From the IMG/VR virus record IMGVR_UViG_3300047321_000238, positions 62,001-126,000 of that record: a stretch of DNA of 64,000 nucleotides. The stretch is one strand, 5' to 3'. Below are positions 17,084 through 56,087 of this stretch, piece after piece. The notes below the pieces were generated by a model. It was not told the DNA's origin. It made no database searches and was given only the letters and a program-made list of their open reading frames with translations. The position numbers and the translations under genes are program-made. Position 1 is the first letter of the stretch. Each line of letters opens with the position of its first letter.

Positions 17084-17518
17084 ATGAGTAAACATGAGAA
17101 AGAAATAGCAAATAAAATTGCATTATATGTTAGTTCAACATATGAAATAATAGACAAGGAAATAATGAAAATGGGCAAAGGACTTTTTAATCGAAAATGC
17201 CACTTGAATTCAGTTCAATGTCTTAAAGATGAATATAACAATGCAACAGAGGTTTATGCTTGTATAACATTAGATGCAGGTTGTATCTCTAATCCTGTAC
17301 TTCACTTCATAAATAAAACAAGTGAAGGATTCTATGTAGATAATACATTAGGATGGGAATATGCTTTATATGATTATTACATTATAAAGAAATTAAATGA
17401 AGATGAATGTAATCATGTGTGGGATTCATTACAAAACATAAGAGACTCGTTAGTTAACTTACAATGTGGTAAGTTATATCAAAAGATATTTTGTATCCAA
17501 AGTTATAATGTATTATAA
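17084..17518 (+). CDS. hypothetical protein
   Basis: GGGGGA SD. Confidence 0.75.
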   Translation: MSKHEKEIANKIALYVSSTYEIIDKEIMKMGKGLFNRKCHLNSVQCLKDEYNNATEVYACITLDAGCISNPVLHFINKTSEGFYVDNTLGWEYALYDYYIIKKLNEDECNHVWDSLQNIRDSLVNLQCGKLYQKIFCIQSYNVL

Positions 17519-17551
17519 ATATGTACAAGCCTAAACAATGGGAGGAAAGAT

Positions 17552-17827
17552 ATGAAGACAGTATTAAAAATCGTTGCTGTATGTACTTTAGGTATGTTTG
17601 ATAGTTTTTTAGCACGAACTTATGAAGCTATACAAACCTTAATTAACAGTCGTTCAGCTGTACAAGCTTTAAAGAACTCCAATGAAGGATATGTAGTAAG
17701 TCAAGTATTTCAATTTGATGGAACTGTATTCTATGGAGTAATGATATTAATAAATGTATTAATCCTTTATTTGATGTTTAGAACATCATTTAAAGTTAAT
17801 AAAGATAAAAATGAAGAAACAAAATAA
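17552..17827 (+). CDS. membrane protein upstream of SPFH gene
   Basis: GGGAGG SD; hydrophobic termini. Confidence 0.75.
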   Translation: MKTVLKIVAVCTLGMFDSFLARTYEAIQTLINSRSAVQALKNSNEGYVVSQVFQFDGTVFYGVMILINVLILYLMFRTSFKVNKDKNEETK

Positions 17828-17852
17828 TAAATATGATGGGGGAAAAATAATT

Positions 17853-18821
17853 ATGAAAAACGTAAATAAAAAAGTGTTAGCAGCAATCTTACTAGTAGGA
17901 ATATCTTCAACAGGACTTATGGCATGTAAGCCATATAACACTCCTGAATTTGTAGATATATCACCATCTCAAACAGCATTTGCTATTCCATTAAAGGGAA
18001 ATGGAGCAGATCAAGTTAAGTTAGATTCAGAAGAAGCTGTTAAAGCAAACTTAGTTACATCTAAAAGAGTACCAATCAGTAAAGAATGGTTACAAACAGG
18101 TAGAGCATTTATATTTGAAGAAGGTAAATGGATTGCAAATGAAGTAGTTATAGTAGTTGAGCGTAAGCCAGAAACTAGAGCTTGGACAGAAGCATCAGGA
18201 ACTGGAACTTCTGTAACAAATGAAGGAATAGAAGCAGAGACTAAAGGCTCAATAGCTTTTATAGCTGGCATGAATTGTACAGCTAGTATTCAAGAGTCTG
18301 ATGCTGCTAAGTATTTATTTAACTATAATGAAAAACCTTTAAAAGATGTAATGGATACAGAAATTAGAGCAGCAGTAGAATCTAAGTTTGGCGAAGAAAT
18401 AGCTAAACGTGATTTAGAAGTAGTTCTTGTTGAGAAAGAACAAATTATGACTGCAGTTAGAACTTATGTTGATGACATGTTTTCTAAGAAAGGAATCACT
18501 ATAAACCAATTAGGTTTAAAAGGTGAGTTCACATATAAAGATCCTAAAGTTCAAGCATCTTTAAATGCTAAATTTACAGCAGCTAAAGACCAAGAATCTC
18601 AAACAATTGTAAATGAAACAAATAAAGCTAAAGCAATTGCTGATGCAGAAGTTATTAGAACTCAAGCATCTACAATGTCTGACACTATTAAACTTAAACA
18701 AGCAGAAGCAGCAATCATTGAAGCAAATGCTAAATTAGAAATGGCTAAATCTATAGGTAACATGAAAGATGTAAAAGTATTAGGAAACAATCCTTTGTTT
18801 GGATCAGACATGTTAAAATAA
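17853..18821 (+). CDS. SPFH/band-7 family lipoprotein
   Basis: Lipobox LMAC; vmDteIRa, GITInqlgl and Ala-rich coiled tail typical of SPFH. Confidence 0.75.
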   Translation: MKNVNKKVLAAILLVGISSTGLMACKPYNTPEFVDISPSQTAFAIPLKGNGADQVKLDSEEAVKANLVTSKRVPISKEWLQTGRAFIFEEGKWIANEVVIVVERKPETRAWTEASGTGTSVTNEGIEAETKGSIAFIAGMNCTASIQESDAAKYLFNYNEKPLKDVMDTEIRAAVESKFGEEIAKRDLEVVLVEKEQIMTAVRTYVDDMFSKKGITINQLGLKGEFTYKDPKVQASLNAKFTAAKDQESQTIVNETNKAKAIADAEVIRTQASTMSDTIKLKQAEAAIIEANAKLEMAKSIGNMKDVKVLGNNPLFGSDMLK

Positions 18822-18828
18822 TAAATAC

Positions 18829-18863
18829 ATGCCAGTGTGAATACTTTTCACTCTGGTATTTTA
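18829..18863 (+). terminator. probable terminator
   Basis: CCAG.GTGAA/TTCAC.CTGG followed by TATTTT. Confidence 0.55.
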
Positions 18864-18963
18864 AAACACATAAACACATAAATACAGTAAATACTTTAAG
18901 GAAACATATAGCAGCAAAATTAAGCTCAGTAAGAACTAGACGAAAGAAACGAGGTGTAGCTTA

Positions 18964-19380
18964 GTGCTTAAAAACAAAGAAAGAAGAGACTATACAAAAA
19001 AACATAATAAAGCATATACGATTGTAGAAGGAATGTTATTAGGTAAAAATACAATACATGGTCTTCTTCATGATGTAGATAAAATAATTTTATATTGTTT
19101 TTTTAATTATAAAACAGTGCATGAATTTCATAGGAAACATTCGAAGCATCATGAGAAAGCTAAGACATTTGAAGATTATTTATCAATGGTAATAGATTGG
19201 GAATGTGCCCGATTTACTAAGCCAGATAAAGGTCTAAATGCATATGATACATTGTATAAATATTATCCAGAACTTGAAAGCAGGATCTTACCTATATTAG
19301 ACGCATTTAATTTAGCTAAGAGTGAAAGCAACTGGTTAGATCATTATAAAGACTATATAGAAGAAAGGTTGGCTGTCTAG
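18964..19380 (+). CDS. His-rich HD-like hypothetical protein
   Basis: LHDVDK, HRKHSKHH, MVIDWEC. Confidence 0.65.
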   Translation: MLKNKERRDYTKKHNKAYTIVEGMLLGKNTIHGLLHDVDKIILYCFFNYKTVHEFHRKHSKHHEKAKTFEDYLSMVIDWECARFTKPDKGLNAYDTLYKYYPELESRILPILDAFNLAKSESNWLDHYKDYIEERLAV

Positions 19381-19595
19381 TGAGATGGAAAAAGATAATC
19401 AAGAAATTTCCTAAGATAGGAGATACAAGAGTAATTAGTTATTTCGCATTACTTTTAGTAGAAATAGATAAAGAAGTAAGATGGCTTGAAAAAGTAACAG
19501 TAAAACAAATAAGAGCATATAAGTACTATGGTCCTTGTGGTCAATACGGTCCACATTGGAAGAATATAAAATTTATAGATGAAGAGGTGAAATAA
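19380..19595 (+). CDS. hypothetical protein
   Basis: Coupled ORF. Confidence 0.65.
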   Translation: MRWKKIIKKFPKIGDTRVISYFALLLVEIDKEVRWLEKVTVKQIRAYKYYGPCGQYGPHWKNIKFIDEEVK

Positions 19596-20371
19596 TGTTA
19601 AAGTTTATTGGAAGAGGATCTTGTTTTAATTCAAAAGAAGGAAACAATTCAGCTTATATAAAAAAAGGTGAAAGTTTCTTATTAATAGATTGTGGTTGTC
19701 TAACTGCAAATAAGATAATTGAATCAAATTTATTAGATGGAGTAAAGAAAGTTCATATATTAATAACGCATTTCCACGATGATCATGTTGGTAGCTTGGG
19801 AAGCTTACTATTATATTGTCGTTATGCATTAGATATAATACCAGATATATATTTTGAAGACAAACAGTATTTAGTTGATTTCTTAGCTATGCAAGGACTA
19901 TTAGAACATGAAGTTTATACGTATATGACAAATAGATATGTTGACGATATGAAATTAACTTATTCTCCAGTTCCAACAAAACATTATGAATTTTATAAGC
20001 CAATTCAAGAGACTGTTTATTCAAGTGAAATAACAAAGACTGTAGTCATGACAAATTACTTTAAATGCTATGGATATTATCTTGTAAAAAATAATATTGA
20101 AAGAACAAATCAACATGCATATTATTCTGGAGACAGCAATTCAATTCCAAAAAATATGTTAGATATATTAGAATTTTATGATTCAGCAATTTTATATCAA
20201 GATGTATGCTTATCAGATGAACATGGATATGCTCATTTACCTCTAAGTAAGTTATGTGAATTAATACCTAAAGAATTAAGACATAAAGTATATTGTATGC
20301 ATTTGAACTCAGATGAATTAATAACTAAATGTAAAGAAGAAGGATTCAACGTTGTTGAAGTGGAGGTTTAA
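19595..20371 (+). CDS. metallo-beta-lactamase fold hydrolase (RNase Z-like)
   Basis: LIDCG, THFHDDHVG, YSGDS, AH, MH motifs. Confidence 0.85.
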   Translation: MLKFIGRGSCFNSKEGNNSAYIKKGESFLLIDCGCLTANKIIESNLLDGVKKVHILITHFHDDHVGSLGSLLLYCRYALDIIPDIYFEDKQYLVDFLAMQGLLEHEVYTYMTNRYVDDMKLTYSPVPTKHYEFYKPIQETVYSSEITKTVVMTNYFKCYGYYLVKNNIERTNQHAYYSGDSNSIPKNMLDILEFYDSAILYQDVCLSDEHGYAHLPLSKLCELIPKELRHKVYCMHLNSDELITKCKEEGFNVVEVEV

Positions 20372-20373
20372 AA

Positions 20374-20604
20374 ATGGAACATGAACATTTATGTACAATA
20401 CAAATTGTAGAAAAATTTCAAGCACTGATTTCAGAAGTAAAAGATTTTGAATCAGCACTTAAAAGCCTTAGAGGAAACGGACCAGATTGGAACGTTGGTA
20501 TAGAAAAAGACGAAAGACCAGCTGTTAAAACTTTATATTTAGCTTATAAAGAAGCAAAAGAAAGAGCTAATGATTTCAATCAAATTATTTGGAAAGAGGC
20601 GTAA
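20374..20604 (+). CDS. hypothetical protein
   Basis: GGAGG SD. Confidence 0.7.
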   Translation: MEHEHLCTIQIVEKFQALISEVKDFESALKSLRGNGPDWNVGIEKDERPAVKTLYLAYKEAKERANDFNQIIWKEA

Positions 20605-20605
20605 G

Positions 20606-21367
20606 ATGAATAAGATATTAAAAAACAGTATAGTAATTATTGTTCTTCTTATGGCATATTCTTTTATAAGTAATTTTGCAAATATAAATGCTTTGTTTAT
20701 GCCAAAAGTAGATACAATATTCGAAGACTTTAAAACATTATTTGCTAATGGAATGCTAACAGAATCTATATTAAAATCATTTTTAAGGATAACAATAGCT
20801 ACAAGTATATCTTGTGCAATAAGTGTTCCTTTAGCATTACTTATATATAGTTCTAAAACATTAGATGATATTATATCACCTATAGCAAATATGTTTAGAT
20901 ATGTACCAATAACTGCTTTCGGCCCATTATTAATATTATGGGTTGGAATAGGCGAAGATATGAAGATAACATTCTTATTTTGTGCAACATTCTTTTATTT
21001 CTTACCAACATTGGTAATGAACATGAAAGAAATAGACATAAGACTTATAGAAACAGGTTACACAATGGGAATGAGTAAGTTCCAAGTAATAACTAAAATT
21101 GTAGTACCTTATACGTTACCAAGTATATGCCAAAGCATTCTTATGATGTATGGAATAGGTTGGTCGTATATAGTTGTAGCAGAAGCTACAAATGCAACAA
21201 GAGGCTTAGGGTATTTAATCAATATAGGTTCTGCAAGAGGTAGAACTGATATGGTATTTATGTCTATGATAACTATAATGGCAATAAGCTTTATAGTAGA
21301 CACAATTGGTAATAAATTAATAGCTAAATGTTTTAGCTGGAAGTTTAAAAAAATAGAGGAAAATTAA
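20606..21367 (+). CDS. ABC transporter permease (SsuC/TauC/NitT type)
   Basis: FRYVPITAFGPLLILWVGIGE, EtGyTMG EAA loop, WSYIVVAE, RGLGYLI. Confidence 0.9.
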   Translation: MNKILKNSIVIIVLLMAYSFISNFANINALFMPKVDTIFEDFKTLFANGMLTESILKSFLRITIATSISCAISVPLALLIYSSKTLDDIISPIANMFRYVPITAFGPLLILWVGIGEDMKITFLFCATFFYFLPTLVMNMKEIDIRLIETGYTMGMSKFQVITKIVVPYTLPSICQSILMMYGIGWSYIVVAEATNATRGLGYLINIGSARGRTDMVFMSMITIMAISFIVDTIGNKLIAKCFSWKFKKIEEN

Positions 21368-21368
21368 T

Positions 21369-21632
21369 ATGGATTCAAATAAATTTAGTAAAATATTATT
21401 AGAAAAAAACGATAAAGATTATGGCTTATGCCCACCACCTATAAATGCTCAAGAAGGATTAAATATCTTAATTGAGCATTTTTTAGGAGAAGATTGGTTT
21501 GTAACAATGCCAATGTGTCAAGAACAGGTAAATACAGCAGCCATTTATACAATATTAAATAAATATCAAAAAAAAGAATCATTAATCGAAATCGTTAAGA
21601 ACATGATAATAAGTAGAGGAAAAATGATATAA
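21369..21632 (+). CDS. hypothetical protein
   Basis: ORF in operon. Confidence 0.7.
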   Translation: MDSNKFSKILLEKNDKDYGLCPPPINAQEGLNILIEHFLGEDWFVTMPMCQEQVNTAAIYTILNKYQKKESLIEIVKNMIISRGKMI

Positions 21633-21663
21633 TAAATAATATAATTTGAGGAGGAAATAACAA

Positions 21664-23718
21664 ATGGGATTAGCATTTAGAAATTTTAAAAAAATATTTC
21701 AAGGAAATTTTGAGGGACTAGTAAAAGATGAAAGTAAATTATTTGAGGTAACAGTAGATAAAGATGAATTATGGTATTTATATCTTAATTCATTCCCAGC
21801 TGGCACTAATGAAATGTATAGAAACAGAAGAGAATTTGATTGTTCTTGCTGTAGACAATTCATGAGAGCTGTAGCTAGTGCCGTTACTATAAAAAATAAT
21901 AAAATAGTTACTATGTGGGACTTTGACGCACAAAGTACTACGTTCCAACCAGTAATTGATGCATTAGATGCTTATATCAAATCTAAAGCTATCAATAGTG
22001 TTTATGTTAGTAAGCTTAAGAAAATAGGTACTGACAGCAATAGAGAATTAGTAGATGGAAATGCAAACACTTGGGAACATTTCTTTTTAGAACTTCCAGA
22101 TAAGTTTGTTGATAGAAGTGATAAGTCTGAAGGAGATATCCAAGGAACTTATAGATCTACTAAAGATGTATTTAAAAGATCTTTAGAAGAATTAACAGTA
22201 GAATCAGTTGAAACATTATTGGAATTAATTGCTTCTAATTCTTTGTATAAAGGTGAAGAATGGAAAGCTGCATTAACAGAATTCTTAAAGCTTAAAAAAG
22301 AATATGAAAAATTACCAGAAGAAGAAAAAGATTTATACGCTTGGGTTAAATCAGTTGATGTCAATATGGCTGTTGGTAGAATAAGAAATCATTCTATCGG
22401 AGTACTTCTTGTTGATCTAAGTGAAGGTATGGATCTAGAAAAAGCTATTAATAAATATGAAACTGTAATTGTAGCACCAGAAAACTTCAAGAGAAAGAGA
22501 GTGTTATATACTTCTAGACAATTAGAAGAAGGTAAAACAAAATTAACTGAAGGAGGATATATGCCAGCACTTCCAAGAAGACATGCTAATCTTGATGATA
22601 TAAGTGTTAACAACATTTTATTTAGCAACAAAGATTCAGCTAAAAGAATGAAAGGAACTGACATATTTGATGAAATGGCAAGTGCTGTTCCAGTTAATCC
22701 TAAGAAGTTCAATAAAGTTGAAGAAATTGCTATAGAAGACTTTGTTAAAAATGTGCTTCCATTAACAAGAGAAGTTGAAGTATATTTAGAAAATAAACAT
22801 TCTAATAACATGATGTCATTGATAACTGCACAAGATGCAGAAGCACCATCTATGTTTAAATGGAATAATCCTTTCTCATGGGCATACTCAGGTAATATCA
22901 CTGACTCTTCTATGAAAGAAAGAGTAAAAGCAGCTGGTGGTGGTGTAGACGGTGTATTAAGATTTAGTATACAATGGAATTCAGGAACTGCCCATGATAG
23001 AAATGATTTAGATGCACATTGTAAAGAACCAGAAAATTATGAAATTTATTTCAACAATAGACACAAGATTAGTCCAACTGGAGGAAAATTAGATGTAGAT
23101 ATTACTAATCCTAGAATTGGAATTCCTGCAGTAGAAAATATAACATGGGCAAATACAAGCAGTATGAAAGAAGGAACTTATAGATTCTTCGTTGATGGTT
23201 TTGCTAATAGAGGAGGTCGTGATGGCTTTACTGCTGAAATAGAATTCAACGGTCAAATCTTCTCATTCGAATACAATAAAGAAGTAAGAGATAAAGAAAA
23301 AGTCATGGTTGCTGAAGTCACTTATAGCAAAGAAAATGGATTCAGTATTAAAGAATTATTACCATCTACTGTGTCTTCGAAAGAAGTATGGGGATTAAAT
23401 ACTAATCAATTTGTACCAGCAAGTGTTGTTATGTTCTCACCAAATTTTTGGGATGAACAAGAAGGAATTGGACATAAGCACTATTTCTTCATGTTGAAGA
23501 ATTGCGTTAACCCAGAGAAACCAAACGGTTTCTATAACGAATTCTTAAACAATGATTTAACACCTATTGCAAGAGTTACTGAATTCTTAGGAAGTAAAAT
23601 GGCTGTGCAAGATGTTAAGGATCAATTATCAGGAGTAGGATTCTCTTCTACTAAGAGGAACAATCTTATAGTAAAAGTAAAAGGTCAAACTGAAAGAGTA
23701 TTAAAAATAATATTTTAA
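21664..23718 (+). CDS. large conserved phage protein, 684 aa, with YfaP/DUF2135-like C-terminal segment
   Basis: FDCSCCRQF; LRFSIQWN...DLDAHC...GKLDVD. Confidence 0.7.
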
Positions 23719-23739
23719 TTAAGAGAGGAAAGATGTAAA

Positions 23740-24120
23740 ATGGAAAAAAATTTATTTGAATTAGCAACAAGAATGAGATTGAGGTTCCCACACAATGGGA
23801 TTGTAGATGTTGAAGGATTGTGGCAATTACCAGTCACTAAATTAGATGCAATATACAAGGTTTTAAATTCTGAAGCAAAGCAAACAAAAGAAGAAAGTCT
23901 TCTTGATACAAAAACAGCTAAAGATGAAGAACTTGAACTTAAAATTGAAATAGTAAAACACATTGTAAAGACAAAGCAAGATGAAGCTAAAACTTTAAAA
24001 AATGCTGCGGCTAAGAAAGAAGAAAAGGAAAAGCTTCTTAGTGTATTAGATAGAAAAGAAAATGAAGCTTTAGAATCTTTATCAGCTGAAGAACTTAAGA
24101 AAAGAATAGCAGAACTATAA
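23740..24120 (+). CDS. coiled-coil phage protein
   Basis: LFELATRMRLRFP...VEGLWQL; E/K-rich tail. Confidence 0.75.
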   Translation: MEKNLFELATRMRLRFPHNGIVDVEGLWQLPVTKLDAIYKVLNSEAKQTKEESLLDTKTAKDEELELKIEIVKHIVKTKQDEAKTLKNAAAKKEEKEKLLSVLDRKENEALESLSAEELKKRIAEL

Positions 24121-24197
24121 TTTTAACGAATTCATTATTTGATATGTAATGTATTGAATAATGAATTCATATTAATGAAAACTAGGAGGAATTTAGT

Positions 24198-24380
24198 ATG
24201 AAGAAAATAGTATCAAGTGATTTAATAGTATATGATGACATGCAAGAGTTTATGGATGAATATCAAAAACTAATAGATATTAAACAACTAAATGGAGAAG
24301 AAGTCGAAACACATTATGCTCATACCCCACAAGGTAATTTCTTTTCAGCATTAGTATTAGGTAGAAAGGATAGATATTAA
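24198..24380 (+). CDS. hypothetical protein
   Basis: AGGAGG SD. Confidence 0.7.
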   Translation: MKKIVSSDLIVYDDMQEFMDEYQKLIDIKQLNGEEVETHYAHTPQGNFFSALVLGRKDRY

Positions 24381-24486
24381 TATGGAACAGAGCAAAACGT
24401 TAGACCAAATATGTACAAAAAAAGGCTTTAAGCCTAATAAAATATATCTATTCAATACTAAATTAATTAAATAGAAGGGTGATAAT

Positions 24487-24705
24487 ATGGATTTGTATAT
24501 AAACATAATAAAAGCTCAGTTAGATAACATAATACAATCTAATAAACATTATGTCGCAGCTAAGGGCGATAAAGGTAAGAAACAGTCAGCTTTAGTACTG
24601 GCTACTAATATATGCAAACTAGAAAAAATTATAGAAGAATCATTAAAAGAGATTGAAAAAGCAGGAGTAGATGTAGATAGAGTAAGAATGAGGTTAGATT
24701 TATGA
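24487..24705 (+). CDS. hypothetical protein
   Basis: AAGGGTG SD. Confidence 0.7.
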   Translation: MDLYINIIKAQLDNIIQSNKHYVAAKGDKGKKQSALVLATNICKLEKIIEESLKEIEKAGVDVDRVRMRLDL

Positions 24706-25331
24706 TAGAATGTACTGGTTTATCTATGAAATATGGAAAACAAGAAATCTTTAAAAACTTTAATCATACCTTTAAAGATAACTCAATAACAGCAATTATG
24801 GGTGAGTCAGGTAAAGGCAAGACTACATTAATTAAATGTATAGCAGGGCTTAATAAAGCTTATGAAGGACAGATTCTATATAAGAAGTCAAAGGAGGATG
24901 CCGCAGGAGATACCATCACTAAACCACATAAGGATATATTTATGATGCATCAAAGCTATACTAATTTTCCTTGGAAAAATTGTTTAGAAAATGTATTGTT
25001 TCCATTAGAAATTAATGGTAAGATAAGTGAAGCAGATATACTAGAAGCAAAAGAGATTTTGGCTTCTGTTAATCTAAATGGATATGAAGATAAACATCCT
25101 AGTGAATTATCTGGAGGAATGAATCAAAGGTTAGCAATGGCAAGAATGCTAATGGCCAAGCCTAGAGTTCTTTTGATGGACGAGCCTATGAGTGCGTTAG
25201 ATAGCGTAACTAGAGGTAAAGTACAGGATTTATTGATGAATTTCCAAAGGAAACTAAAAAATACAATCATATTAATAACACATGATGAAAGCGAAGCTAA
25301 GAGAATATCAAGTGAGATAATAAATTTTTAG
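24702..25331 (+). CDS. ABC transporter ATP-binding protein
   Basis: Walker A GESGKGKTT, signature LSGGMNQR, Walker B LLMDEP, ITHD. Confidence 0.95.
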   Translation: MIECTGLSMKYGKQEIFKNFNHTFKDNSITAIMGESGKGKTTLIKCIAGLNKAYEGQILYKKSKEDAAGDTITKPHKDIFMMHQSYTNFPWKNCLENVLFPLEINGKISEADILEAKEILASVNLNGYEDKHPSELSGGMNQRLAMARMLMAKPRVLLMDEPMSALDSVTRGKVQDLLMNFQRKLKNTIILITHDESEAKRISSEIINF

Positions 25332-25343
25332 GAGGAAAAAATT

Positions 25344-25880
25344 ATGGGATTTATGGACAAAATTAAAAACGCATTAATAGAAGAGGACGTTACTTCGGTA
25401 AACGTAGGGCCTGCAGGGAGAGTAAATGTAACTCCAGTAGCAACGTATGAACCAATTATAGAAGTAGATACTACAAATGTATTAAGTATTGACAATATCT
25501 ATGAAGCTGGCTGTATTACAGACAGAGAAAGATCAATCTATAAAGTAGAAGAAATTAGAAAGATACTTCCAGATAGTCTTACAAAAGAAGCAAAGAAAGC
25601 TTCAGTTGTTGGAATGTTAAGTGTTTCAAAGATAACTGTAGAAGAAGTATGTTTAGATGCAGATAAGAGAACTGAATTGCTATTAAATACATTAGAACAA
25701 TTCACTCAAGAAACTGTAGCTATTAGACAACAAGCTCAAGTAGAAATTGATGAGTTAGAAGCTCAAGTTGAAGCAAAGAAAGCAGAAGTAACTGCAAGAA
25801 ACTTAGAACAAGAAAAACAAGGTGAAATTATAACTACAGAATTAGAAGCAATTAGAACAATAAATGAATTTATTAAATAA
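25344..25880 (+). CDS. hypothetical coiled-coil protein of the ABC/PspA module
   Basis: AGGAGG SD; between ATPase and PspA-like genes. Confidence 0.75.
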   Translation: MGFMDKIKNALIEEDVTSVNVGPAGRVNVTPVATYEPIIEVDTTNVLSIDNIYEAGCITDRERSIYKVEEIRKILPDSLTKEAKKASVVGMLSVSKITVEEVCLDADKRTELLLNTLEQFTQETVAIRQQAQVEIDELEAQVEAKKAEVTARNLEQEKQGEIITTELEAIRTINEFIK

Positions 25881-25896
25881 GAGAGGATGATGTAAA

Positions 25897-26625
25897 ATGA
25901 TAACTTTAATCGTTGGAGCATTAATTGTATTCGGAGGTATTTTAGTAGTATTTCCAAAGTCTAGAGTATTGTTAAAAGGAATGGTCAATGTCTTCATAGA
26001 AGATGCAGCTAAAACTCCTGAAGGAGCTAAAGCAGTATATAATGAAGCTATTGATCAAAAGAAGAAAGATTATACTAGAGCAGCTGATACATTACAAAAG
26101 TTCACGGGAGCTCTTGAAACAGCTAAGAATAATCAAATTAGAGCAGAAAAAGATTTAAAGAATGCTGAACATCAATGTGATGTATTAATGAGTCAAAACA
26201 ATGAAGCTGATGCACAAATCATGGTGCAAGAAGTAATGCTTCATAGAAAAGAAATCGAAACTTATTCAGCTCAAGTTGCTAAGTTAACACCAGCAGTTGA
26301 AGAAGCTAGAAATATAGCTACAACATTCCAAAAAGATGTTAAAGAACTTCAAGTCAAGAGAGAAATGAATGTTAAAGATCTTGAACTTAATATTCAAAAT
26401 AAAGAGTTATATGATAGTTTAGATGAGTTAAGACATTCTAAACCAATCAATAATCTTCTTAAATCAGTTGAAGAAGGTATTGTTGAAAAGAGAGAAATAG
26501 CTGTTGGAGCTAGAGAAGTTCATGAAAACAAACTTACAACAAAGATCGATAGAATTAACACTAAAGTAGCTGATGTCGAAAGTGATAATTATTTAGCTAG
26601 TTTAAGAGATAAATATAAGAAATAA
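25897..26625 (+). CDS. PspA/IM30-like coiled-coil protein with N-terminal TM
   Basis: TM then long heptad helix ending YLASLRDKY. Confidence 0.7.
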   Translation: MITLIVGALIVFGGILVVFPKSRVLLKGMVNVFIEDAAKTPEGAKAVYNEAIDQKKKDYTRAADTLQKFTGALETAKNNQIRAEKDLKNAEHQCDVLMSQNNEADAQIMVQEVMLHRKEIETYSAQVAKLTPAVEEARNIATTFQKDVKELQVKREMNVKDLELNIQNKELYDSLDELRHSKPINNLLKSVEEGIVEKREIAVGAREVHENKLTTKIDRINTKVADVESDNYLASLRDKYKK

Positions 26626-26655
26626 TTGTAACAAATATGAGGAGGATGTAATAAA

Positions 26656-28224
26656 ATGAAAAGATTTAAATTTACAAAAACAGCGAGGATTTTATTAGTA
26701 ATACTAGCTTTAGCTATAATAGGTGTGTTAGGTTGGAAAACTGGAGCAGCTAAAAAAGTAGTAACATTTGCAAAGAACGATGTATCTTCAGTATTTAGTA
26801 AAAATGATAGTACTGATGAAATGTATGCAAAAGCAGAAGCAATTAAAAAAGAAGATGGAGCTATTAATATATCATTAGATGAATGGGTTGGTTGGAAACC
26901 TATTATAGATGCTAACGGTGGTTTACAAACTGCTAAAGGAAGTATCTTAGATAAAAAAGGAATTAAATTAAACATTTCAGTAATTAATGATTATACTCAA
27001 TCAAGTAATGCTTTAATCAAAGGTGATCTTAATGCCGCTGGTTATACAGTAAATAGATATGCTTTTCTTTATGACAAATTTAAATCAGCTAATGTTGAAA
27101 CTAATATGGGTATCATAATTGATAACTCCAATGGTGGTAACGGAATTATAGCTAAAAAAGGTATTAATAGTTTAAGAGATTTAATAGGTAAGAAGATTGG
27201 TATTCCAAGATTCTCTGAATGTCAAGCAATGGTAGAATTCTTAATCCAAAAATCAGATTTAACAGCTGATGAAGCTACAAAATTAAGAGCAGGATTCGTT
27301 CCATTTGACTCTCCAGATGATACAGCTAAAGCATTCTATGCTGGAGAATTAGATGCAGCATCAACTTGGCAACCATATCTAACACAAGCAACATCTACAG
27401 TAGATGCACATATATTGTTCTCTACAAAAGATGCTCCAAACTTAATTATGGATGGTCTTGTGTTTAGAAAAGATTTCGCAGATAAGAATAAAGAAACTAT
27501 CGAAAAATTATTAGAAGGTATTTTAGAAGCACAAGCAATATATTCTACAGATGCAAAAGCTATATCTCAATCTTTCCCAATGTTTGCAACTCAAACAGAT
27601 AAAGAAACTTTAGATATGACTGGTGATTCACAACCAACTAATAGTGCAAGTATGTTAAATTATATGGATAAAAACGGAGCTGCTGTCAACTTATTCAGAG
27701 ATATGGCTAACATATGGTCTGGATTAGGAGAAAAATCAGATCCAGCAAATGCAGCAGTTGCATTTGATAACACTTATATTAAAGATGTTGCACCTAAATA
27801 TACTGATGCTAAGGTAGCAAAGCCAACATTTACTGCAGAACAAAAACAAACTGCACAATCTCAAGATAATAAACAAGCTTTATTAAGTCAAAAATTATCT
27901 ATTAGTTTTGATGTTGGTAGTGCAAGTATATCTTCAGATAGTTATGCATCATTAAAAGAATTCTTTAACACAGCGAATATATTAAACGGTACTGTTATCC
28001 AAATTGAGGGTAACACAGATAATACTGGAGATGCAACAGCTAACCAAGCATTATCTGAAAAGAGAGCACAAAGTATTGCAAAATACTTACAAGCTCAAGG
28101 TTTAGATGCAAGTAGATTCGTAGTTATTGGTAATGGACCTAATAAACCAGTTGCAGATAATAATTCTGCCGAAGGTCAAGCTGCTAATAGAAGAACAGAT
28201 ATGTACTTCAAAGTAGTTAAATAA
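26656..28224 (+). CDS. SsuA/THI5-like substrate-binding protein fused to an OmpA/MotB-like domain
   Basis: DNSNGGNGII, DLIGKKI, GELDAASTWQPY; IEGNTD, NQALSEKRA, NRRTD. Confidence 0.85.
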   Translation: MKRFKFTKTARILLVILALAIIGVLGWKTGAAKKVVTFAKNDVSSVFSKNDSTDEMYAKAEAIKKEDGAINISLDEWVGWKPIIDANGGLQTAKGSILDKKGIKLNISVINDYTQSSNALIKGDLNAAGYTVNRYAFLYDKFKSANVETNMGIIIDNSNGGNGIIAKKGINSLRDLIGKKIGIPRFSECQAMVEFLIQKSDLTADEATKLRAGFVPFDSPDDTAKAFYAGELDAASTWQPYLTQATSTVDAHILFSTKDAPNLIMDGLVFRKDFADKNKETIEKLLEGILEAQAIYSTDAKAISQSFPMFATQTDKETLDMTGDSQPTNSASMLNYMDKNGAAVNLFRDMANIWSGLGEKSDPANAAVAFDNTYIKDVAPKYTDAKVAKPTFTAEQKQTAQSQDNKQALLSQKLSISFDVGSASISSDSYASLKEFFNTANILNGTVIQIEGNTDNTGDATANQALSEKRAQSIAKYLQAQGLDASRFVVIGNGPNKPVADNNSAEGQAANRRTDMYFKVVK

Positions 28225-28235
28225 TAAAGATAATT

Positions 28236-28264
28236 GGGCTCATATAAATGGGCCCTTTGTTTTA
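28236..28264 (+). terminator. Rho-independent terminator
   Basis: GGGCTCAT/ATGGGCCC followed by TTTGTTTT. Confidence 0.8.
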
Positions 28265-28325
28265 TTAATATATGTATTCAGTAATATGAATATAAATATT
28301 AGTAAAAATAAAAGGAGTTATTATT

Positions 28326-28589
28326 ATGATATTGTTAAATATTTTTATCACTTTTTGCGTTTGGGCAATTGGTTGTTATGTTGTTCAAGAATATGAGTTT
28401 TTTAATGAATTTGCTGAAAAATTTCCAAGACCGATAGAATTATTCATTAAAATTTTGTATATGACTCCCTATGTAGGTCTTATAATAGTTGTTACTACTA
28501 TTTGTCTTTTGTTATGTGGATGTATAATTGGAATAATTATATTATATCCTATAAGTTGTATTACAAGTATATTTGAAAAAGATAAATAA
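28326..28589 (+). CDS. membrane protein
   Basis: AAGGAG SD; hydrophobic. Confidence 0.7.
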   Translation: MILLNIFITFCVWAIGCYVVQEYEFFNEFAEKFPRPIELFIKILYMTPYVGLIIVVTTICLLLCGCIIGIIILYPISCITSIFEKDK

Positions 28590-28604
28590 TAAGGTGGATG
28601 ATAG

Positions 28605-28946
28605 ATGGAATTATTAAAGTATATCAATAATCTAAATAACATTAGTAAACCTCGAACAGTTATAAAAATTAAAAGAGGAGTAATAAATAACTTACCTAAT
28701 AGATTAGAACCAAATGAAATATTTTATGTAACAGATGCCCATATATTAGGAGTAGCTGATAGCACAGGAAATCCTAATTTATTAGTAGCAGTCGAAGAAC
28801 TACCTTATATAGAAGATTTTCCTGTATATCCCGATAGAAATAAATTATACTATTCAATATTGAATGAGCAAGTATATTATTATGATTATCAGACTCAGAG
28901 ATATGAACCTGTTAGATTAAATACATTTAATTTAGATATTAGATAA
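28605..28946 (+). CDS. hypothetical protein with tag (MELLKYIN)
   Basis: Tag on an unrelated body, 11.5 kb from the array. Confidence 0.8.
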   Translation: MELLKYINNLNNISKPRTVIKIKRGVINNLPNRLEPNEIFYVTDAHILGVADSTGNPNLLVAVEELPYIEDFPVYPDRNKLYYSILNEQVYYYDYQTQRYEPVRLNTFNLDIR

Positions 28947-28957
28947 GGAGGAGTATT

Positions 28958-29167
28958 ATGGTAGAAAAGAAAATAGTTAATGTAAATTACTATAGAAGTT
29001 GGTTTGGTATAATTCATAAATGCACAATCATAGGACATGAAACCTTTTATCCTATAATATGTGATACGTATACAAGATATCTTATAAAAATAGAAAGTAA
29101 CGGCAAATTAAAATATGTTCATGAGAAAAGAATAGTCAGTGGAAAGGAAGAAGTTTATGATATCTAA
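28958..29167 (+). CDS. hypothetical protein
   Basis: AGGAGGAG SD. Confidence 0.7.
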   Translation: MVEKKIVNVNYYRSWFGIIHKCTIIGHETFYPIICDTYTRYLIKIESNGKLKYVHEKRIVSGKEEVYDI

Positions 29168-30171: not shown

Positions 30172-30429
30172 GTGATGAAAATTAACACAATAGCAGAGAT
30201 TGTCTTAAAATACAAAGAAAAGGAATATAAATTTAATTTTGATTTTGGGAGTTATATTCCAAGTGAAAATGCAGAATATTTGTTTGAAGATGGTAATTAT
30301 GCTTGTGATTGTAATAGGTCAATGTTTATAAAGAAATATTGTAATAAGGATTTTTTGGAATTACAATGCGGTGGAGATGAAATAGATTTAATAAGCTTCA
30401 CAATAATACAAGAGGGGCAAAAAGAATAA
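30172..30429 (+). CDS. hypothetical protein
   Basis: GNYACDCNRS motif. Confidence 0.7.
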   Translation: MMKINTIAEIVLKYKEKEYKFNFDFGSYIPSENAEYLFEDGNYACDCNRSMFIKKYCNKDFLELQCGGDEIDLISFTIIQEGQKE

Positions 30430-30479
30430 TGAGACGCAATACTAAAATATTACGCATAAAAAATAAGGAGGAAATTATT

Positions 30480-31157
30480 ATGAAAATTATCGCATTTATA
30501 GGGCCTACAGGCACAGGAAAGAGTTCTATACAAAAAGGAGTACAAGAATACTACAGAGATAGAGCAAGCTATACAAATGACAGCATGAATGACTACTTGC
30601 GAGTTAAAACAGTTGTTACAACTACAGACAGAGCAATAAGACATGGAGAAAAGAATGGAAAGGATTATCACTTCGTTATACCTGAAACATTTAAAACTGG
30701 AGTAGTCAATGACCACTTTATTGAAGTAAAGACAGTTAAAGATTATGAAGAGAAAGAAATTCATTATGGATTAAAAAAAGATGCTTTAGGTATCTTAAGT
30801 AATAATAATGACATATTATTGTTATCACTAGATATTGGTGGATTAATTAATCTACAACAGTATCTACAAGAACAAGAATTAGATTCAAATGAAATATTAT
30901 TCCCAATCTTCATTGAAACATCTGCTGAAAGAAGAATGAGAAGATGTATGATTAGAGCTACAGGAGATACTGGACAAGGGCCTCATATAAAATGTCCAGA
31001 TGAAACTGTATATAAGATTTGTGAAAGAATGATTCATGATGCAGAAGAAAACGAAGAAGCTAAAGATTATTGTATTTTAACAATTAAAAATGAAATGGAT
31101 TGTGATAAGCAAGAATGTGTTAGCTTTGTTATTAAGTTAATTCAAGGCATGCTTTAA
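30480..31157 (+). CDS. gmk: guanylate kinase-like protein
   Basis: GPTGTGKSS, TTTDRAIRHGEKNGKDYHFV; start re-assigned after AAGGAGG. Confidence 0.8.
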   Translation: MKIIAFIGPTGTGKSSIQKGVQEYYRDRASYTNDSMNDYLRVKTVVTTTDRAIRHGEKNGKDYHFVIPETFKTGVVNDHFIEVKTVKDYEEKEIHYGLKKDALGILSNNNDILLLSLDIGGLINLQQYLQEQELDSNEILFPIFIETSAERRMRRCMIRATGDTGQGPHIKCPDETVYKICERMIHDAEENEEAKDYCILTIKNEMDCDKQECVSFVIKLIQGML

Positions 31158-36093: not shown

Positions 36094-37524
36094 ATGTTAA
36101 AAGATATTAGAAAAAATCCAATTAAGTTAACTGATTGCTATAACTTATCACATGAGGAATTAAAATGTAATACAGACTTTGAAGTTTCTCATATGTATAA
36201 TAGAGCAGACGGAATGTTATTATATGGCTTTAAAGAAATTGCATTAGGTATTCTTAGTATAAAGATTACAGAAGAAATGGTTGAAGATGCAGCAGTTGAT
36301 GCTGAAGAATTAAACTTAACTTTCCCTAAAGATTTATGGATGAGAGTAGTTACAGAATGTAGAGGATATGTTCCATTAGAAGTTCAATCAGTTCCAGAAG
36401 GAACATGGTGCCCTAAAGGAACTCCATTTGCTCAAGTAAGAAATACCGTAGAAGGTTTCGGAGAAATGGTTACATGGTTTGAAGGCGTGTTTATGATGGC
36501 GTATTTCCCATCTACATGTGCAACTAGAGCATTTGAAATGAGAAACTATTTAGAAGAAAAGAAAGAACAATACGGATACGATGATAGCTTTCTATGGAGA
36601 TTTCATAGTTTTGGATTCAGAGGACATAAAAGCTTGGAAGATGCGTACTTCGCAGGAACTGCATGGTCAACATTCTTATTAGGAACAGATGATTTCCATA
36701 TAAGACAACACATGTCAGAAGATACTGTTATGGGAAGTATTGCAGCGTTAGCTCATAAAGTTACGCAACAATATGATAATGAATATGATTGTTTCATTCG
36801 TTCAATAGATTATGCAGCTGCAAGCGGTAAGAATATCGTAGCTTTAGTTATAGATACTTACAATGCATATAGAGTTATTCAAGAATATGTGTTAAAATTA
36901 GCTGAGTATGCTAAAGGAAAAGGAGTTCATATTGTATTTAGACCAGATAGTGGAGACATTTTTGGACAAGCAATGGCTATATATACAAGAGTTTCAACTG
37001 CAGGTTATAAAAATGTAAGTGTAATAATTGGAGAAGGTATGAGTTTTAATAATGCTAAATCAATGGATAAAAAATTTGAGTTAATGGGAGTGCCATTAAC
37101 ATTTATTGCTTATGGTATAGGAGCAGGATTCTATAAAGATATAGAAAGAGATACTTTAGGATGGGCAATGAAGACTGGTTATTCTAATGGAGCTCCAAGA
37201 ATGAAAGTAGTTAAGTCGGATCCATTTAAGCAATCAATACCTGGGATTGTAGATTTAATGTACGATGAAGATGATTTAATGACAGTATATATAGAAAAAG
37301 AAGATAATGCTGCTGATTCAATATATGAATGTATATATAGATATGATCTTGATCAAAATACAACACCTTCTATGAAAGACTTATCTTATATTCCTGCACA
37401 AGCTATTAAGGATAGAGCATACAATACTACAGGATATAGAGTTGGAGAAAAAATACAAGAAAGAATAATCATATCTAATGAAATTAAAGAACTTATAAAT
37501 GTAATAACAAAAAAATATGAATAA
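36094..37524 (+). CDS. nadV: nicotinamide phosphoribosyltransferase (NAMPT/NadV)
   Basis: TDCYNLSH, FHSFGFRG, GTD, AHKV, VIDTY, RPDSG, GEG, GIGAG. Confidence 0.85.
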   Translation: MLKDIRKNPIKLTDCYNLSHEELKCNTDFEVSHMYNRADGMLLYGFKEIALGILSIKITEEMVEDAAVDAEELNLTFPKDLWMRVVTECRGYVPLEVQSVPEGTWCPKGTPFAQVRNTVEGFGEMVTWFEGVFMMAYFPSTCATRAFEMRNYLEEKKEQYGYDDSFLWRFHSFGFRGHKSLEDAYFAGTAWSTFLLGTDDFHIRQHMSEDTVMGSIAALAHKVTQQYDNEYDCFIRSIDYAAASGKNIVALVIDTYNAYRVIQEYVLKLAEYAKGKGVHIVFRPDSGDIFGQAMAIYTRVSTAGYKNVSVIIGEGMSFNNAKSMDKKFELMGVPLTFIAYGIGAGFYKDIERDTLGWAMKTGYSNGAPRMKVVKSDPFKQSIPGIVDLMYDEDDLMTVYIEKEDNAADSIYECIYRYDLDQNTTPSMKDLSYIPAQAIKDRAYNTTGYRVGEKIQERIIISNEIKELINVITKKYE

Positions 37525-46301: not shown

Positions 46302-46494
46302 TATGGTAGATAATAAAAAAGATAATGCATTTATTGAAAAAATTGCTAAAGAAATTGATGAAAATAAAATACACATAGGAATTGAAAATATATTAGAACT
46401 AGTTTATGATATGGGAGTTAAAGAAGGAAAAGCATTGGTAGTAAAAAATGCTGTTGAATTCATAAGTAAGTAAATAATCTTGAGGGGGATTAAA

Positions 46495-53086: not shown

Positions 53087-53173
53087 GGAAGAGTGGCCGA
53101 GATGGTTGATGGCGGCAGACTGTAAATCTGTTCTGTAAAAAGCACGTTGGTTCGAATCCAACCTTTTCCACCA
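53087..53173 (+). tRNA. tRNA-Tyr(GTA)
   Basis: Cloverleaf, long variable arm, CCA. Confidence 0.95.
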
Positions 53174-53412
53174 AAGTCTAAGGTTAAGATATATTCACTC
53201 AATTGACTTGAATTGAATAAAGTTACACATTAGGTTAGTAATACTTTGATTAAAGATATATTCATCAGAATATTGATAGTCAATTATAACTATACGTAAT
53301 ATGGATGTTTCTGAACTTCAGCCCCTGTGGTACATAAATATGTGAGAAATATCGGAGTATTCTAATTAGGAATATGTGTCTAGTAGTAGGTCGGGACTAG
53401 ACAAAATAATAT

Positions 53413-53488: not shown

Positions 53489-53557
53489 GTAGGTTTTTGT
53501 TAGCTTTTGCCGTAGAACTCCTAGAGAGAGTCAAATCAAAAACTATCTCCACCATAT

Positions 53558-56086: not shown

Positions 56087-56087
56087 T

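What the first reader, a model, noticed from the sequence alone, without database searches (positions are those of the whole stretch)
20606..28224. Complete but split ABC importer with PspA-like and SBP-OmpA components in a phage
Seen: the permease (20606) is separated by 3.3 kb from the ATPase, an unknown coiled-coil protein, a PspA/IM30-like protein and a membrane-anchored SsuA-like binding protein fused to an OmpA/MotB peptidoglycan-binding domain. The ligand is unknown. Inference: it may work with the SPFH protein as an envelope-stabilising or signalling complex during infection rather than as a simple nutrient transporter.
Basis: partly seen in the sequence, partly recalled or inferred. 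Interest (0 to 1): 0.6.

Follow-up and report, generated by a model that had tools for sequence, protein, structure and literature searches.

The report
Phage ABC importer coupled to PspA
A 248-kb phage carries a conserved five-gene envelope module: an ABC importer whose binding protein is pinned to the cell wall, plus a membrane-anchored PspA-type membrane-repair protein and an unknown coiled-coil partner. The module type has already been noted in bacteria and huge phages, no function has been tested for it, and here it is split by inserted accessory genes.

Summary
On a complete 247,883-bp phage record, the window encodes:
- a NitT/TauT-type permease (20606-21367);
- a short but motif-complete ABC ATPase (24702-25331);
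- a 178-aa orphan coiled-coil protein (25344-25880);
- a 242-aa TM-anchored PspA/IM30-family protein (25897-26625);
- a signal-anchored NMT1/SsuA-like binding protein fused to an OmpA-like peptidoglycan-binding domain (26656-28224).

In 82 of 104 related loci these five genes are contiguous and often overlap. The loci include Bacillus phage G gp243-250, 100-560-kb phage contigs and phage regions in cultured Clostridia genomes.

The 3.3-kb split is specific to this lineage. The permease/ATPase junction is an insertion point holding Tad8, DUF8224 and small ORFs here, and NADAR in a relative.

Chromosomal Clostridia variants pair the same ABC/SBP-OmpA core with TelA and VWA proteins. This again points to envelope stress rather than plain nutrition.

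The operon theme (TM-PspA/Snf7 + ABC + PBP-OmpA) was described by Ravi et al. 2024. Phage PspA next to complete ABC transporters was reported in an October 2026 preprint. This is therefore a new member of a known but functionally untested kind.

Ligand, physical interactions and expression remain untested. The SPFH link is weak (12 loci).

The parts
20606..21367 (+). ABC importer permease (type I, NitT/TauT family; 253 aa from the ATG at 20606). It is separated from the rest of the cassette.
   Evidence: BPD_transp_1 4.4e-18. TauC 4.2e-30, SaoP 6.3e-30 and SsuC 1e-23, all below the equivalog cut-offs. The coupling-loop (EAA) region around residues 149-172 is conserved in 101 homologs.
21369..24705 (+). 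Lineage-specific insertion between permease and ATPase. It holds Tad8 (21369-21632), a DUF8224/phrog_1735 protein (21664-23718), a phrog_2018 protein (23740-24120) and two small ORFs (24198-24380, 24487-24705). It is not part of the module.
   Evidence: Tad8 PF25189 1e-23. phrog_1735 3.9e-258 and phrog_2018 1.9e-36. DUF8224 assignment. Relatives have no gap here. L111 has NADAR plus two small genes at the same junction and L112 has three unknown genes.
24702..25331 (+). ABC ATPase, a short nucleotide-binding domain of 209 aa with no C-terminal regulatory domain.
   Evidence: ABC_tran 1.1e-30. Walker A, Q-loop, the LSGGMNQR signature, Walker B, D-loop and H-loop are present and conserved across 104 homologs.
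25344..25880 (+). p178, an orphan cytoplasmic protein. It has a short conserved N-terminal helix, an acidic linker, a small helical head (about residues 49-94) and an 80-residue helix.
   Evidence: No Pfam, PHROG or NCBIfam hit. Homologs sit at the same position in 89 loci. AF2 pLDDT 88.8. No named structural match in PDB or the Atlas.
25897..26625 (+). p242, a membrane-anchored PspA/IM30 (ESCRT-III-type) protein. An N-terminal TM helix is followed by a cytoplasmic helical hairpin and further helices.
   Evidence: phrog_33389 5.8e-50. 41 of 69 homologs hit PF04012, best 6.6e-13. AF2 pLDDT 89.4 with helices 41-99, 103-180, 183-211 and 213-240. The top Foldseek hits are Vipp1/PspA over about 220 columns. 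TM segment at residues 1-27.
26656..28224 (+). Substrate-binding protein (NMT1/SsuA-like, about residues 70-400) with an N-terminal signal-anchor and a C-terminal OmpA-like peptidoglycan-binding domain (about residues 405-522).
   Evidence: OmpA 4.7e-21, NMT1 5.6e-12, NMT1_2 2.5e-10. TIGR03427 8.4e-20 and SsuA_fam 7.1e-17. TauA is the nearest solved SBP, 2e-5. More than 1,200 fusion homologs.
28236..28265 (+). Terminator-like hairpin plus T-run, 12 nt after the SBP-OmpA stop codon. It is the only + strand terminator-like site in 17500-29000.
   Evidence: The total number of such sites in the region is not above chance, so only the position is suggestive.
17811..18821 (+). SPFH/Band-7 membrane protein 1.8 kb upstream. 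This is context and a loosely associated neighbour.
   Evidence: Band_7 2.8e-6. TM segment at residues 21-40. SPFH homologs lie within 8 kb of the cassette in 12 loci.

Best explanation
This is a conserved envelope module of large phages, apparently of low-GC Bacillota hosts. It appears to be related to a bacterial operon type.

Shown:
- It encodes a complete type-I ABC importer of the NitT/TauT family. There is one permease gene and one ATPase gene, so presumably a homodimer of each.
- Its binding protein is kept at the outer face of the membrane by an N-terminal signal-anchor.
- The binding protein also carries an OmpA-like peptidoglycan-binding domain.
- Two cytoplasmic-side partners are inherited together with the importer: a TM-anchored PspA/IM30 (ESCRT-III-type) protein and the orphan coiled-coil protein p178.

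Inferred:
- The four or five proteins form one wall-to-membrane complex.
- During the long infection cycle of a big phage, the importer takes up a small solute that is still unknown.
- The PspA polymer, held at the same site by its TM helix, keeps the cytoplasmic membrane tight and energised.

In this phage lineage the permease gene has been cut off from the rest by insertion of unrelated cargo, including the anti-Thoeris gene Tad8. No predicted terminator lies in between, so the genes are probably still co-transcribed.
For: - Domain assignments.
- All ATPase catalytic motifs and the permease coupling loop are conserved.
- Topology is consistent. The TM anchors of p242 and the SBP are each followed or preceded by basic residues, and p178 and the ATPase have no TM segment.
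- PspA membership of the p242 family.
- Five-gene synteny in 82 of 104 loci, with median gene distances of -17, 11, -1 and 11 nt.
- Presence in phage G gp243-250, in a 558-kb phage, and in phage regions of Dysosmobacter segnis and Lacrimispora amygdalina assemblies.
- A bacterial-looking 4-gene version, permease-ATPase-PspA-like-SBP-OmpA, flanked by PilZ and MFS genes.
- Chromosomal Clostridia versions of the ABC/SBP-OmpA core always sit beside TelA and VWA genes, in 10 of 10 loci.
- Lak and 735-kb megaphages carry the same kinds of parts in permuted order.
- A terminator-like site occurs only after the SBP gene.
- Literature. Ravi et al. 2024 (PMC11237479) describe operons of PspA, TM-Snf7, ABC ATPase, permease and a PBPB+OmpA protein. 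Yuan & Chen 2026 (10.64898/2026.10.24.761521) report 15 huge-phage pspA genes next to complete ABC transporters.
Against:
- The complex prediction for ATPase + p242 + p178 gave no answer, so no physical link is shown.
- The ligand is unknown. All SBP matches are far below the equivalog cut-offs.
- The window's own p242 matches PF04012 only at 10.8 bits.
- Structural matches of helical hairpins are not discriminating. Vipp1 (Z 12.4) ties with unrelated coiled coils.
- One relative, L116, lacks the ATPase gene in the cassette.
- The canonical Asp of the OmpA peptidoglycan-binding motif is present here (D455) but is variable among relatives.
Confidence: 0.5

Rival explanations
1. It is a plain auxiliary metabolic transporter. 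The phage imports a nutrient, such as a sulfonate, a nitrogen source or a pyrimidine precursor, to feed replication. The PspA-like and p178 genes are merely neighbours.
For: The importer is complete and its catalytic motifs are intact. Family assignments are to nutrient importers such as TauABC and SsuABC. The window also carries metabolic cargo: NAMPT-like, NadR-like and guanylate kinase genes.
Against: p178 and p242 sit between the ATPase and the SBP genes with overlapping or near-overlapping reading frames in 82 loci. The partnership persists across under 45% identity and in permuted gene orders. Chromosomal relatives swap PspA for TelA/VWA stress genes rather than for metabolic enzymes. 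A wall-binding domain on an SBP is not needed for uptake.
Confidence: 0.15
2. It is a mechanotransducer or sensor rather than a transporter. The SBP-OmpA bridge between wall and membrane reports wall damage, spacing, or a wall-derived ligand. The ABC ATPase cycle then drives assembly or disassembly of the PspA polymer. In this reading it takes the place of the AAA+ ATPase found in the related bacterial operons.
For: The related Handelsmanbacteria operon of Ravi et al. has an AAA+ pair beside TM-Snf7, and the phage cassette has none. The phage ATPases are shortened to about 205 aa and are followed by p178, whereas bacterial versions have 242-299 aa and no p178. The SBP is tethered at both ends.
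Against: Type-I BPD_transp_1 importers are not known to act as mechanotransducers (established knowledge; the known cases are type VII, FtsEX/MacB-like). The many invariant columns in the SBP domain would fit a conserved small-molecule site, although the pocket was not mapped. No interaction evidence exists.
Confidence: 0.2
3. It is a counter-defence or lysis-timing device. The module keeps the membrane polarised against membrane-disrupting abortive-infection effectors, or against premature holin triggering or superinfection.
For: In this lineage the cassette lies in an accessory island with an Apyc1-like MBL hydrolase, Tad8 and NAD-salvage genes. A NADAR gene is inserted at the same junction in a relative. 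PspA proteins are known to counter loss of proton-motive force (established knowledge; preprint).
Against: In phage G, the 558-kb phage and the Dysosmobacter region, the cassette lies among DNA replication and repair genes, not defence islands. This proposal names a biological role, is compatible with the main explanation, and has no direct evidence.
Confidence: 0.15

Closest known systems
[quoted passage not shown] 2024, mSystems, PMC11237479; example OGG56892.1, Candidatus Handelsmanbacteria)
   Same: It has an ESCRT-III-type protein with a TM segment, an ABC ATPase, a permease and a signal-bearing binding protein fused to OmpA, all in one operon. The authors likewise propose that membrane remodelling is linked to solute transport.
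   Different: That operon also has a soluble PspA and a double AAA+ ATPase, and its gene order differs. Here there is no AAA+ gene, the TM protein scores as PspA_IM30 rather than Snf7, and the orphan p178 is present. The system is phage-borne, and the SBP scores as NMT1/SsuA-like.
Huge-phage pspA loci next to complete ABC transporters or SPFH proteins (Yuan & Chen, bioRxiv 10.64898/2026.10.24.761521, Oct 2026)
   Same: These are phage-encoded PspA genes in large genomes, mostly of Bacillota-associated gut phages. 15 loci have an SBP, ATPase and permease, and 36 have SPFH. The authors propose a membrane-stress role.
   Different: The main text of the survey does not mention the OmpA fusion on the SBP (text search). 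The PspA section and the text searches showed nothing about the TM anchor of this PspA branch, the p178 partner, phage G, the TelA/VWA chromosomal variant or the split arrangement. The supplements were not read.
TauABC / SsuABC (NitT/TauT family, TC 3.A.1.17) sulfonate importers
   Same: There is one BPD_transp_1 permease gene, one ATPase gene and one class-II SBP of the NMT1/SsuA type. TauC is the best permease match and TauA is the nearest solved SBP.
   Different: All scores are far below the equivalog cut-offs (for example TauC 105 vs 342 bits). The ATPase is about 45 aa shorter than the TauB model (209 vs 255 positions). The SBP is signal-anchored, fused to OmpA, and has no lipobox. The ligand is unknown.
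PspA / Vipp1(IM30) / LiaH membrane-protecting ESCRT-III homologs
   Same: The PF04012 profile matches the protein family. The predicted model has a helical hairpin plus three further helices of the same lengths and order as Vipp1.
   Different: A fully hydrophobic TM helix precedes the PspA core. This replaces recruitment by an amphipathic helix or by partner proteins such as PspB/C or LiaI. No pspBC, liaI or pspF genes are nearby.
Clostridia chromosomal TelA | SBP-OmpA, permease, ATPase, 2TM-helical protein, SBP-OmpA, VWA | TelA loci (found here, apparently undescribed)
   Same: These loci have the same ABC/SBP-OmpA core. In a quick tree their SBPs form one clade nested near the window's SBP.
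   Different: They have no PspA-like or p178 gene, two SBP-OmpA copies and a longer ATPase (273-299 aa). An unrelated 229-aa two-TM helical protein occupies the slot between the ATPase and the SBP.

Membership tests
Type-I ABC importer, NitT/TauT family | Permease with the BPD_transp_1 fold and a cytoplasmic coupling (EAA) loop | tested here: met
   PF00528 66 bits against a cut-off of 26.4. The loop region is conserved in 101 homologs.
Type-I ABC importer, NitT/TauT family | ATPase with Walker A, Q-loop, LSGGQ-type signature, Walker B, D-loop and H-loop | tested here: met
   PF00005 107 bits. All motifs are present and at least 90% conserved.
Type-I ABC importer, NitT/TauT family | Cognate extracytoplasmic SBP of the NMT1/SsuA class | tested here: met
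   NMT1 46 bits and NMT1_2 41 bits, both above their cut-offs. An N-terminal TM/signal segment is present.
Type-I ABC importer, NitT/TauT family | Equivalog-level identity to a transporter of known substrate (TauABC, SsuABC, nitrate, choline and others) | tested here: not met
   All NCBIfam hits are far below the curated cut-offs, for example TauC 105 vs 342 bits and SsuA_fam 61.5 vs 163.5 bits.
Type-I ABC importer, NitT/TauT family | ATP-dependent uptake of a solute | not testable with these tools
   This needs ligand binding and transport assays.
PspA/IM30 (ESCRT-III superfamily) | Match to the PF04012 profile | tested here: inconclusive
   The window protein scores 10.8 bits, E 0.031. Of its homologs, 41 of 69 match (best 6.6e-13). 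L116's homolog scores 42.4 bits against a cut-off of 33.9. The feature is met for the family but not for this sequence alone.
PspA/IM30 (ESCRT-III superfamily) | Alpha1-alpha2 hairpin followed by helices alpha3 to alpha5 | tested here: met
   AF2 pLDDT 89, helices 41-99, 103-180, 183-211 and 213-240. Vipp1 and PspA chains are the top Foldseek hits and are covered end to end, TM 0.5-0.66. The VIA Z of 12.4 ties with unrelated coiled coils.
PspA/IM30 (ESCRT-III superfamily) | N-terminal amphipathic helix alpha0 as the membrane-binding element | tested here: not met
   Residues 1-20 are a fully hydrophobic TM helix. A second helix at residues 20-38 may correspond to alpha0.
PspA/IM30 (ESCRT-III superfamily) | Polymerisation into rings or rods on membranes | not testable with these tools
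   This needs EM of the purified protein.
OmpA-like peptidoglycan-binding domain (PF00691) | Profile match, plus the Asp and Arg of the GxTD...LSxxRA motif that bind the peptide stem (known from A. baumannii OmpA and Pal; recalled knowledge) | tested here: met
   PF00691 75 bits. The window has GNTD(455)...LSEKR(470)A. R470 is invariant in 28 relatives, and D455 is variable among them.
TM-PspA/Snf7 + ABC + PBP-OmpA operon class (Ravi et al. 2024) | TM-bearing ESCRT-III-type protein, ABC ATPase, permease and SBP-OmpA fusion in one gene cluster | tested here: met
   In this window the permease is displaced by 3.3 kb, but it is contiguous in relatives.
TM-PspA/Snf7 + ABC + PBP-OmpA operon class (Ravi et al. 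2024) | Associated double AAA+ ATPase and a second, soluble PspA | tested here: not met
   Neither is in or beside the cassette. There is only one PF04012-like place in the 248-kb genome. A ClpX-like AAA+ gene lies 34 kb away.

The most novel reading that the evidence does not exclude
The five proteins form a wall-tethered machine in which the ABC ATPase cycle powers or gates an ESCRT-III (PspA) membrane-repair polymer through p178, rather than only importing a solute. Large phages would use it as a generic shield that keeps the host membrane energised against membrane-depolarising abortive-infection effectors or premature lysis.
Probability: 0.12. Interest if true: 0.8.

Novelty: new member of a known kind. 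Interest (0 to 1): 0.45.

Why it matters
PspA/ESCRT-III proteins coupled to ABC transporters and wall-binding SBPs have been noticed only by comparative genomics. No such system has a known ligand, stoichiometry or phenotype.

This work adds four things:
- The phage version is a fixed five-gene unit with a previously unremarked partner, p178.
- It is present in the cultivable Bacillus phage G, which makes it experimentally tractable.
- It has a chromosomal sister system linked to TelA and VWA stress genes.
- In one phage lineage the permease/ATPase junction collects accessory genes, including an anti-defence gene.

If the physical coupling is real, it would be a new way of localising membrane repair, and a new kind of host-envelope management by large phages.

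Tried and rejected
No read mapping and no expression or co-transcription evidence followed, and I did not try another route.
- Complex prediction on ATPase + p242 + p178, with p178 as the partner, gave 'no answer' with score 0.00. This is neither support nor evidence against binding.
- Megablast of the region against cultured phages found nothing.
- A single-sequence scan of viral contigs found nothing. The alignment-based scan worked.
- A profile of p242 against PDB sequences gave only coiled-coil noise.
- p178 had no PDB match (best E 1.4) and only unnamed Atlas clusters.
- My first iterated p242 HMM was contaminated and also hit the ATPases. Those hits were removed and a clean profile from A3 was used.
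- The idea that p178's N-terminus is an amphipathic membrane-targeting helix, like alpha0 of Vipp1 (a resemblance recalled from memory), was not supported. A crude hydrophobic-moment test gave 0.43 against 0.41 for shuffles.
- The idea that DUF8224 and phrog_2018 belong to the module was rejected. They flank the cassette in about 35 loci. However, DUF8224 is in 497 phage records of Ackermannviridae-like and Herelleviridae-like phages.
- No homology was found between the 229-aa slot protein of the TelA/VWA loci and p242 or p178.
- No homology was found between DUF8224 and the VWA protein.
- Homology of the Lak and megaphage helical proteins to p178 and p242 stayed weak.
- A search for the terminase, intended for host inference, failed.
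- None of the ten small flanking ORFs has a Pfam family. The small ORFs are shared only with the nearest relative.
Full report
**Where the window lies.** The window is bases 62001-126000 of a 247,883-bp virus record with direct terminal repeats, judged complete. It is about 29% G+C, with a positive GC skew in every 2-kb window. All genes assigned here lie on the + strand.

**Checking the observation.**
- Permease, 20606-21367: BPD_transp_1 (4.4e-18). It is nearest to TauC, SaoP and SsuC but far below their equivalog cut-offs.
- ATPase, 24702-25331: a 209-aa ABC ATPase (ABC_tran 1.1e-30). Walker A, Q-loop, signature (LSGGMNQR), Walker B, D-loop and H-loop are present and conserved in 104 homologs. 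It ends 14 residues after the H-loop, so it has no regulatory domain.
- p178, 25344-25880: no family in Pfam, PHROGs or NCBIfam.
- p242, 25897-26625: a hydrophobic N-terminal helix followed only by helices.
- SBP-OmpA, 26656-28224: a basic N-terminus and a TM/signal segment without a lipobox cysteine, an NMT1/SsuA-like binding domain, a linker, and an OmpA-like domain (OmpA 4.7e-21, NMT1 5.6e-12).
- In the OmpA motif GNTD...LSEKRA both ligand-contacting residues are present. R470 is invariant in relatives, and D455 is variable.
- The distance between the permease and the ATPase is 3,334 nt.

**Is p242 PspA-like?**
- On its own the protein fails. It has no PF04012 hit at E 0.01 and scores 10.8 bits in a genome-wide search.
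- Its family passes. A profile search of 1.8 billion representatives found 278 relatives.
- Of 69 diverse relatives, 41 match PspA_IM30 (best 6.6e-13).
- The homolog in a human-faecal phage contig scores 42.4 bits against a gathering score of 33.9. JGI names one close relative 'phage shock protein A'.
- The AF2 model (pLDDT 89.4) has a TM helix, a short helix, a 59/78-residue hairpin and two more helices.
- Vipp1 and PspA chains are the best Foldseek hits and are covered end to end (TM 0.5-0.66, E 4e-3 and weaker).
- The second-look aligner shows that such helical hairpins tie with unrelated coiled coils. The structural evidence is therefore supportive, not decisive.
- I conclude that p242 belongs to a divergent, TM-anchored branch of PspA/IM30.

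**p178.**
- Homologs exist only at this position of this cassette (89 loci).
- They share a short N-terminal helix with a consensus like MG-L-x-K-L-G-LVEE, then a strongly acidic linker (mean net charge -8.8).
- A small conserved helical head follows, with invariant Y53, S64, D105 and R109, and then an 80-residue helix.
- No solved or named predicted structure resembles it.

**Is the grouping real?**
- The SBP-OmpA fusion has more than 1,200 homologs.
- Alignment-based scans returned 80 viral contigs and 23 loci from species-representative genomes.
- With home-made profiles, 82 of 104 loci show the order permease, ATPase, p178, p242, SBP-OmpA. The median distances are -17, 11, -1 and 11 nt. 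These loci fall into about 30 clusters at under 75-80% identity.
- Carriers include Bacillus phage G (gp243-gp250, with two SBP-OmpA genes), a 558-kb phage and 100-215-kb IMG/VR contigs.
- Contigs of cultured Clostridia also carry it: Dysosmobacter segnis, Hominicoprocola fusiformis, Lacrimispora amygdalina, Acetatifactor muris.
- In Dysosmobacter the surroundings are phage replication genes: SSAP, SSB, primase-helicase, Pol III alpha and Thy1.
- The 'bacterial' carriers are therefore largely phage regions. The 2026 preprint also found this for gut pspA genes.

**The split.**
- Only the window and its two nearest relatives have genes between the permease and the ATPase. These are L111 (68% SBP identity, 259-kb contig) and L112 (58%, 262 kb).
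- L111 has NADAR plus two small genes there (908 nt). L112 has three unknown genes (1,209 nt). The window has Tad8, DUF8224, phrog_2018 and two small ORFs.
- Elsewhere the largest permease-ATPase gap is 272 nt.
- DUF8224 occurs in 497 cultured-phage records. The small ORFs are shared only with L111.
- The split is therefore a lineage-specific insertion point for cargo, part of it anti-defence, and not a feature of the system.
- Gene spacing stays tight. The only + strand terminator-like hairpin in 17500-29000 lies 12 nt after the SBP stop codon. Co-transcription is therefore plausible but unproven.

**Bacterial relatives.**
- A Bacillota MAG contig has permease, ATPase (242 aa), a p242 homolog (27% identity, 3e-24; PF04012 E 0.0015) and SBP-OmpA, between PilZ and MFS genes and without p178.
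- Ten rumen or gut Clostridia loci, one on a 766-kb contig, have a different arrangement. The order is SBP-OmpA, permease, ATPase (273-299 aa), an unrelated 229-aa two-TM helical protein, a second SBP-OmpA and a 561-aa VWA protein.
- All ten of these loci have a TelA gene on the opposite strand beyond the VWA gene. Three of them also have a second TelA gene upstream of the first SBP-OmpA.
- Their SBPs form one clade (support 100) close to the window's SBP in a quick, midpoint-rooted tree. That tree does not give direction.
- The core therefore keeps company with two different membrane-stress families.

**Megaphages.** Lak phages of Prevotella and a 735-kb phage have 27-30% identical SBP-OmpA proteins. 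Upstream of each lie an acidic-linker coiled-coil protein and a TM-anchored helical protein. A permease and a long ATPase follow. Homology of the two helical proteins to p178 and p242 is weak, so I treat this as the same architecture with kinship not shown.

**How it probably works.**
- Shown: the importer is complete and catalytically competent. The SBP and OmpA domains face outward, and the ATPase, p178 and the PspA body face the cytoplasm.
- Inferred: the parts form one complex fixed to the wall. It imports an unknown small solute while a locally anchored PspA polymer protects the membrane during a long infection.
- Rivals are listed with their tests. They are a plain nutrient importer, a sensor in which the ABC cycle drives the PspA polymer, and a counter-defence or lysis-timing role.
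- The SPFH gene 1.8 kb upstream recurs near the cassette in only 12 loci.

**What is known.**
- Ravi et al. 2024 list a Handelsmanbacteria operon of PspA, PBPB+OmpA protein, permease, ABC ATPase, TM-Snf7 and a double AAA+ ATPase. They propose a link between membrane remodelling and solute transport.
- Yuan & Chen (October 2026 preprint) count 189 pspA genes in huge phages, 15 beside complete ABC transporters and 36 beside SPFH.
- The finding is therefore a new member of a known kind that has not been tested experimentally.
- New details here are the fixed p178 partner, the breadth of the five-gene unit including phage G, the TelA/VWA sister system and the insertion hot-spot.

**Limits.**
- No interaction evidence: the complex job gave no answer.
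- No ligand.
- The host is inferred only. The nearest cultured matches are Bacillus phages, and relatives lie in Bacillota assemblies.

Noticed in passing
window 21369-21632 (+): An 87-aa protein matches the type II Thoeris inhibitor Tad8 (PF25189, 1e-23, 83 bits against a cut-off of 27). It starts 1 nt after the permease stop codon.
   Followed up: partly
window 19595-20371 (+): A metallo-beta-lactamase-fold hydrolase has a sub-threshold match to the anti-Pycsar nuclease Apyc1 (35 bits against a cut-off of 50). Its counterpart in relative L111 (4338-5117) is listed with Apyc1.
   Followed up: no
window 21664-24120 (+): A DUF8224/phrog_1735 protein (684 aa) and a phrog_2018 protein (126 aa) form a pair. 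The pair flanks the cassette upstream in about 18 loci and downstream in about 17. DUF8224 alone is in 497 cultured-phage records, with best matches of 58-61% in Bacillus cereus-group phages. Its function is unknown.
   Followed up: partly
window 53087-57952 (+): An array of 16 tRNA genes explains the local G+C rise to 0.34-0.40. ARAGORN reports two with odd anticodon loops (53558-53634 and 55668-55746) and a tRNA-Asn with anticodon ATT (55306-55383).
   Followed up: no
window 36094-37524 and 46480-47553 (+): There is a NAPRTase/NAMPT-like protein and an AAA_28 (NadR-like) protein, which suggests NAD salvage cargo. The Dysosmobacter phage region also carries NAMPT and NAD synthase genes next to the cassette (L109).
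   Followed up: no
window 62617-63873, 44970-45848, 30429-31157 (+): A ClpX/ClpB-like AAA+ ATPase, a radical SAM protein and a guanylate kinase-like protein lie in the same accessory region.
   Followed up: no
L101 2237-12200, and L088-L098, L106: This is a chromosomal Clostridia system: SBP-OmpA, permease, ATPase, a 229-aa two-TM helical protein, a second SBP-OmpA and a VWA protein, with TelA on the opposite strand downstream in all ten loci and a second TelA upstream in three. No description turned up in the one paper search aimed at it.
   Followed up: partly
L114 6311-13679 (Lak-B5) and L115 6340-12098 (735-kb phage): Megaphages carry the same kinds of parts in permuted order: coiled-coil protein, TM-helical protein, SBP-OmpA, permease, then an ATPase with a 100-130-aa N-terminal extension. 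In Lak-B5 three small paralogous ORFs sit between the SBP and the permease.
   Followed up: partly
L116 1469-5528 (MT835556): A human-faecal phage contig has permease, p178, PspA-like and SBP-OmpA genes but no ATPase ORF. Only 217 nt separate the permease and p178.
   Followed up: no
L002 9905-13110 (phage G gp249, gp250) and L004 10001-13420: The largest carriers have two tandem SBP-OmpA genes. The second copies form their own clade, which indicates an old duplication.
   Followed up: no
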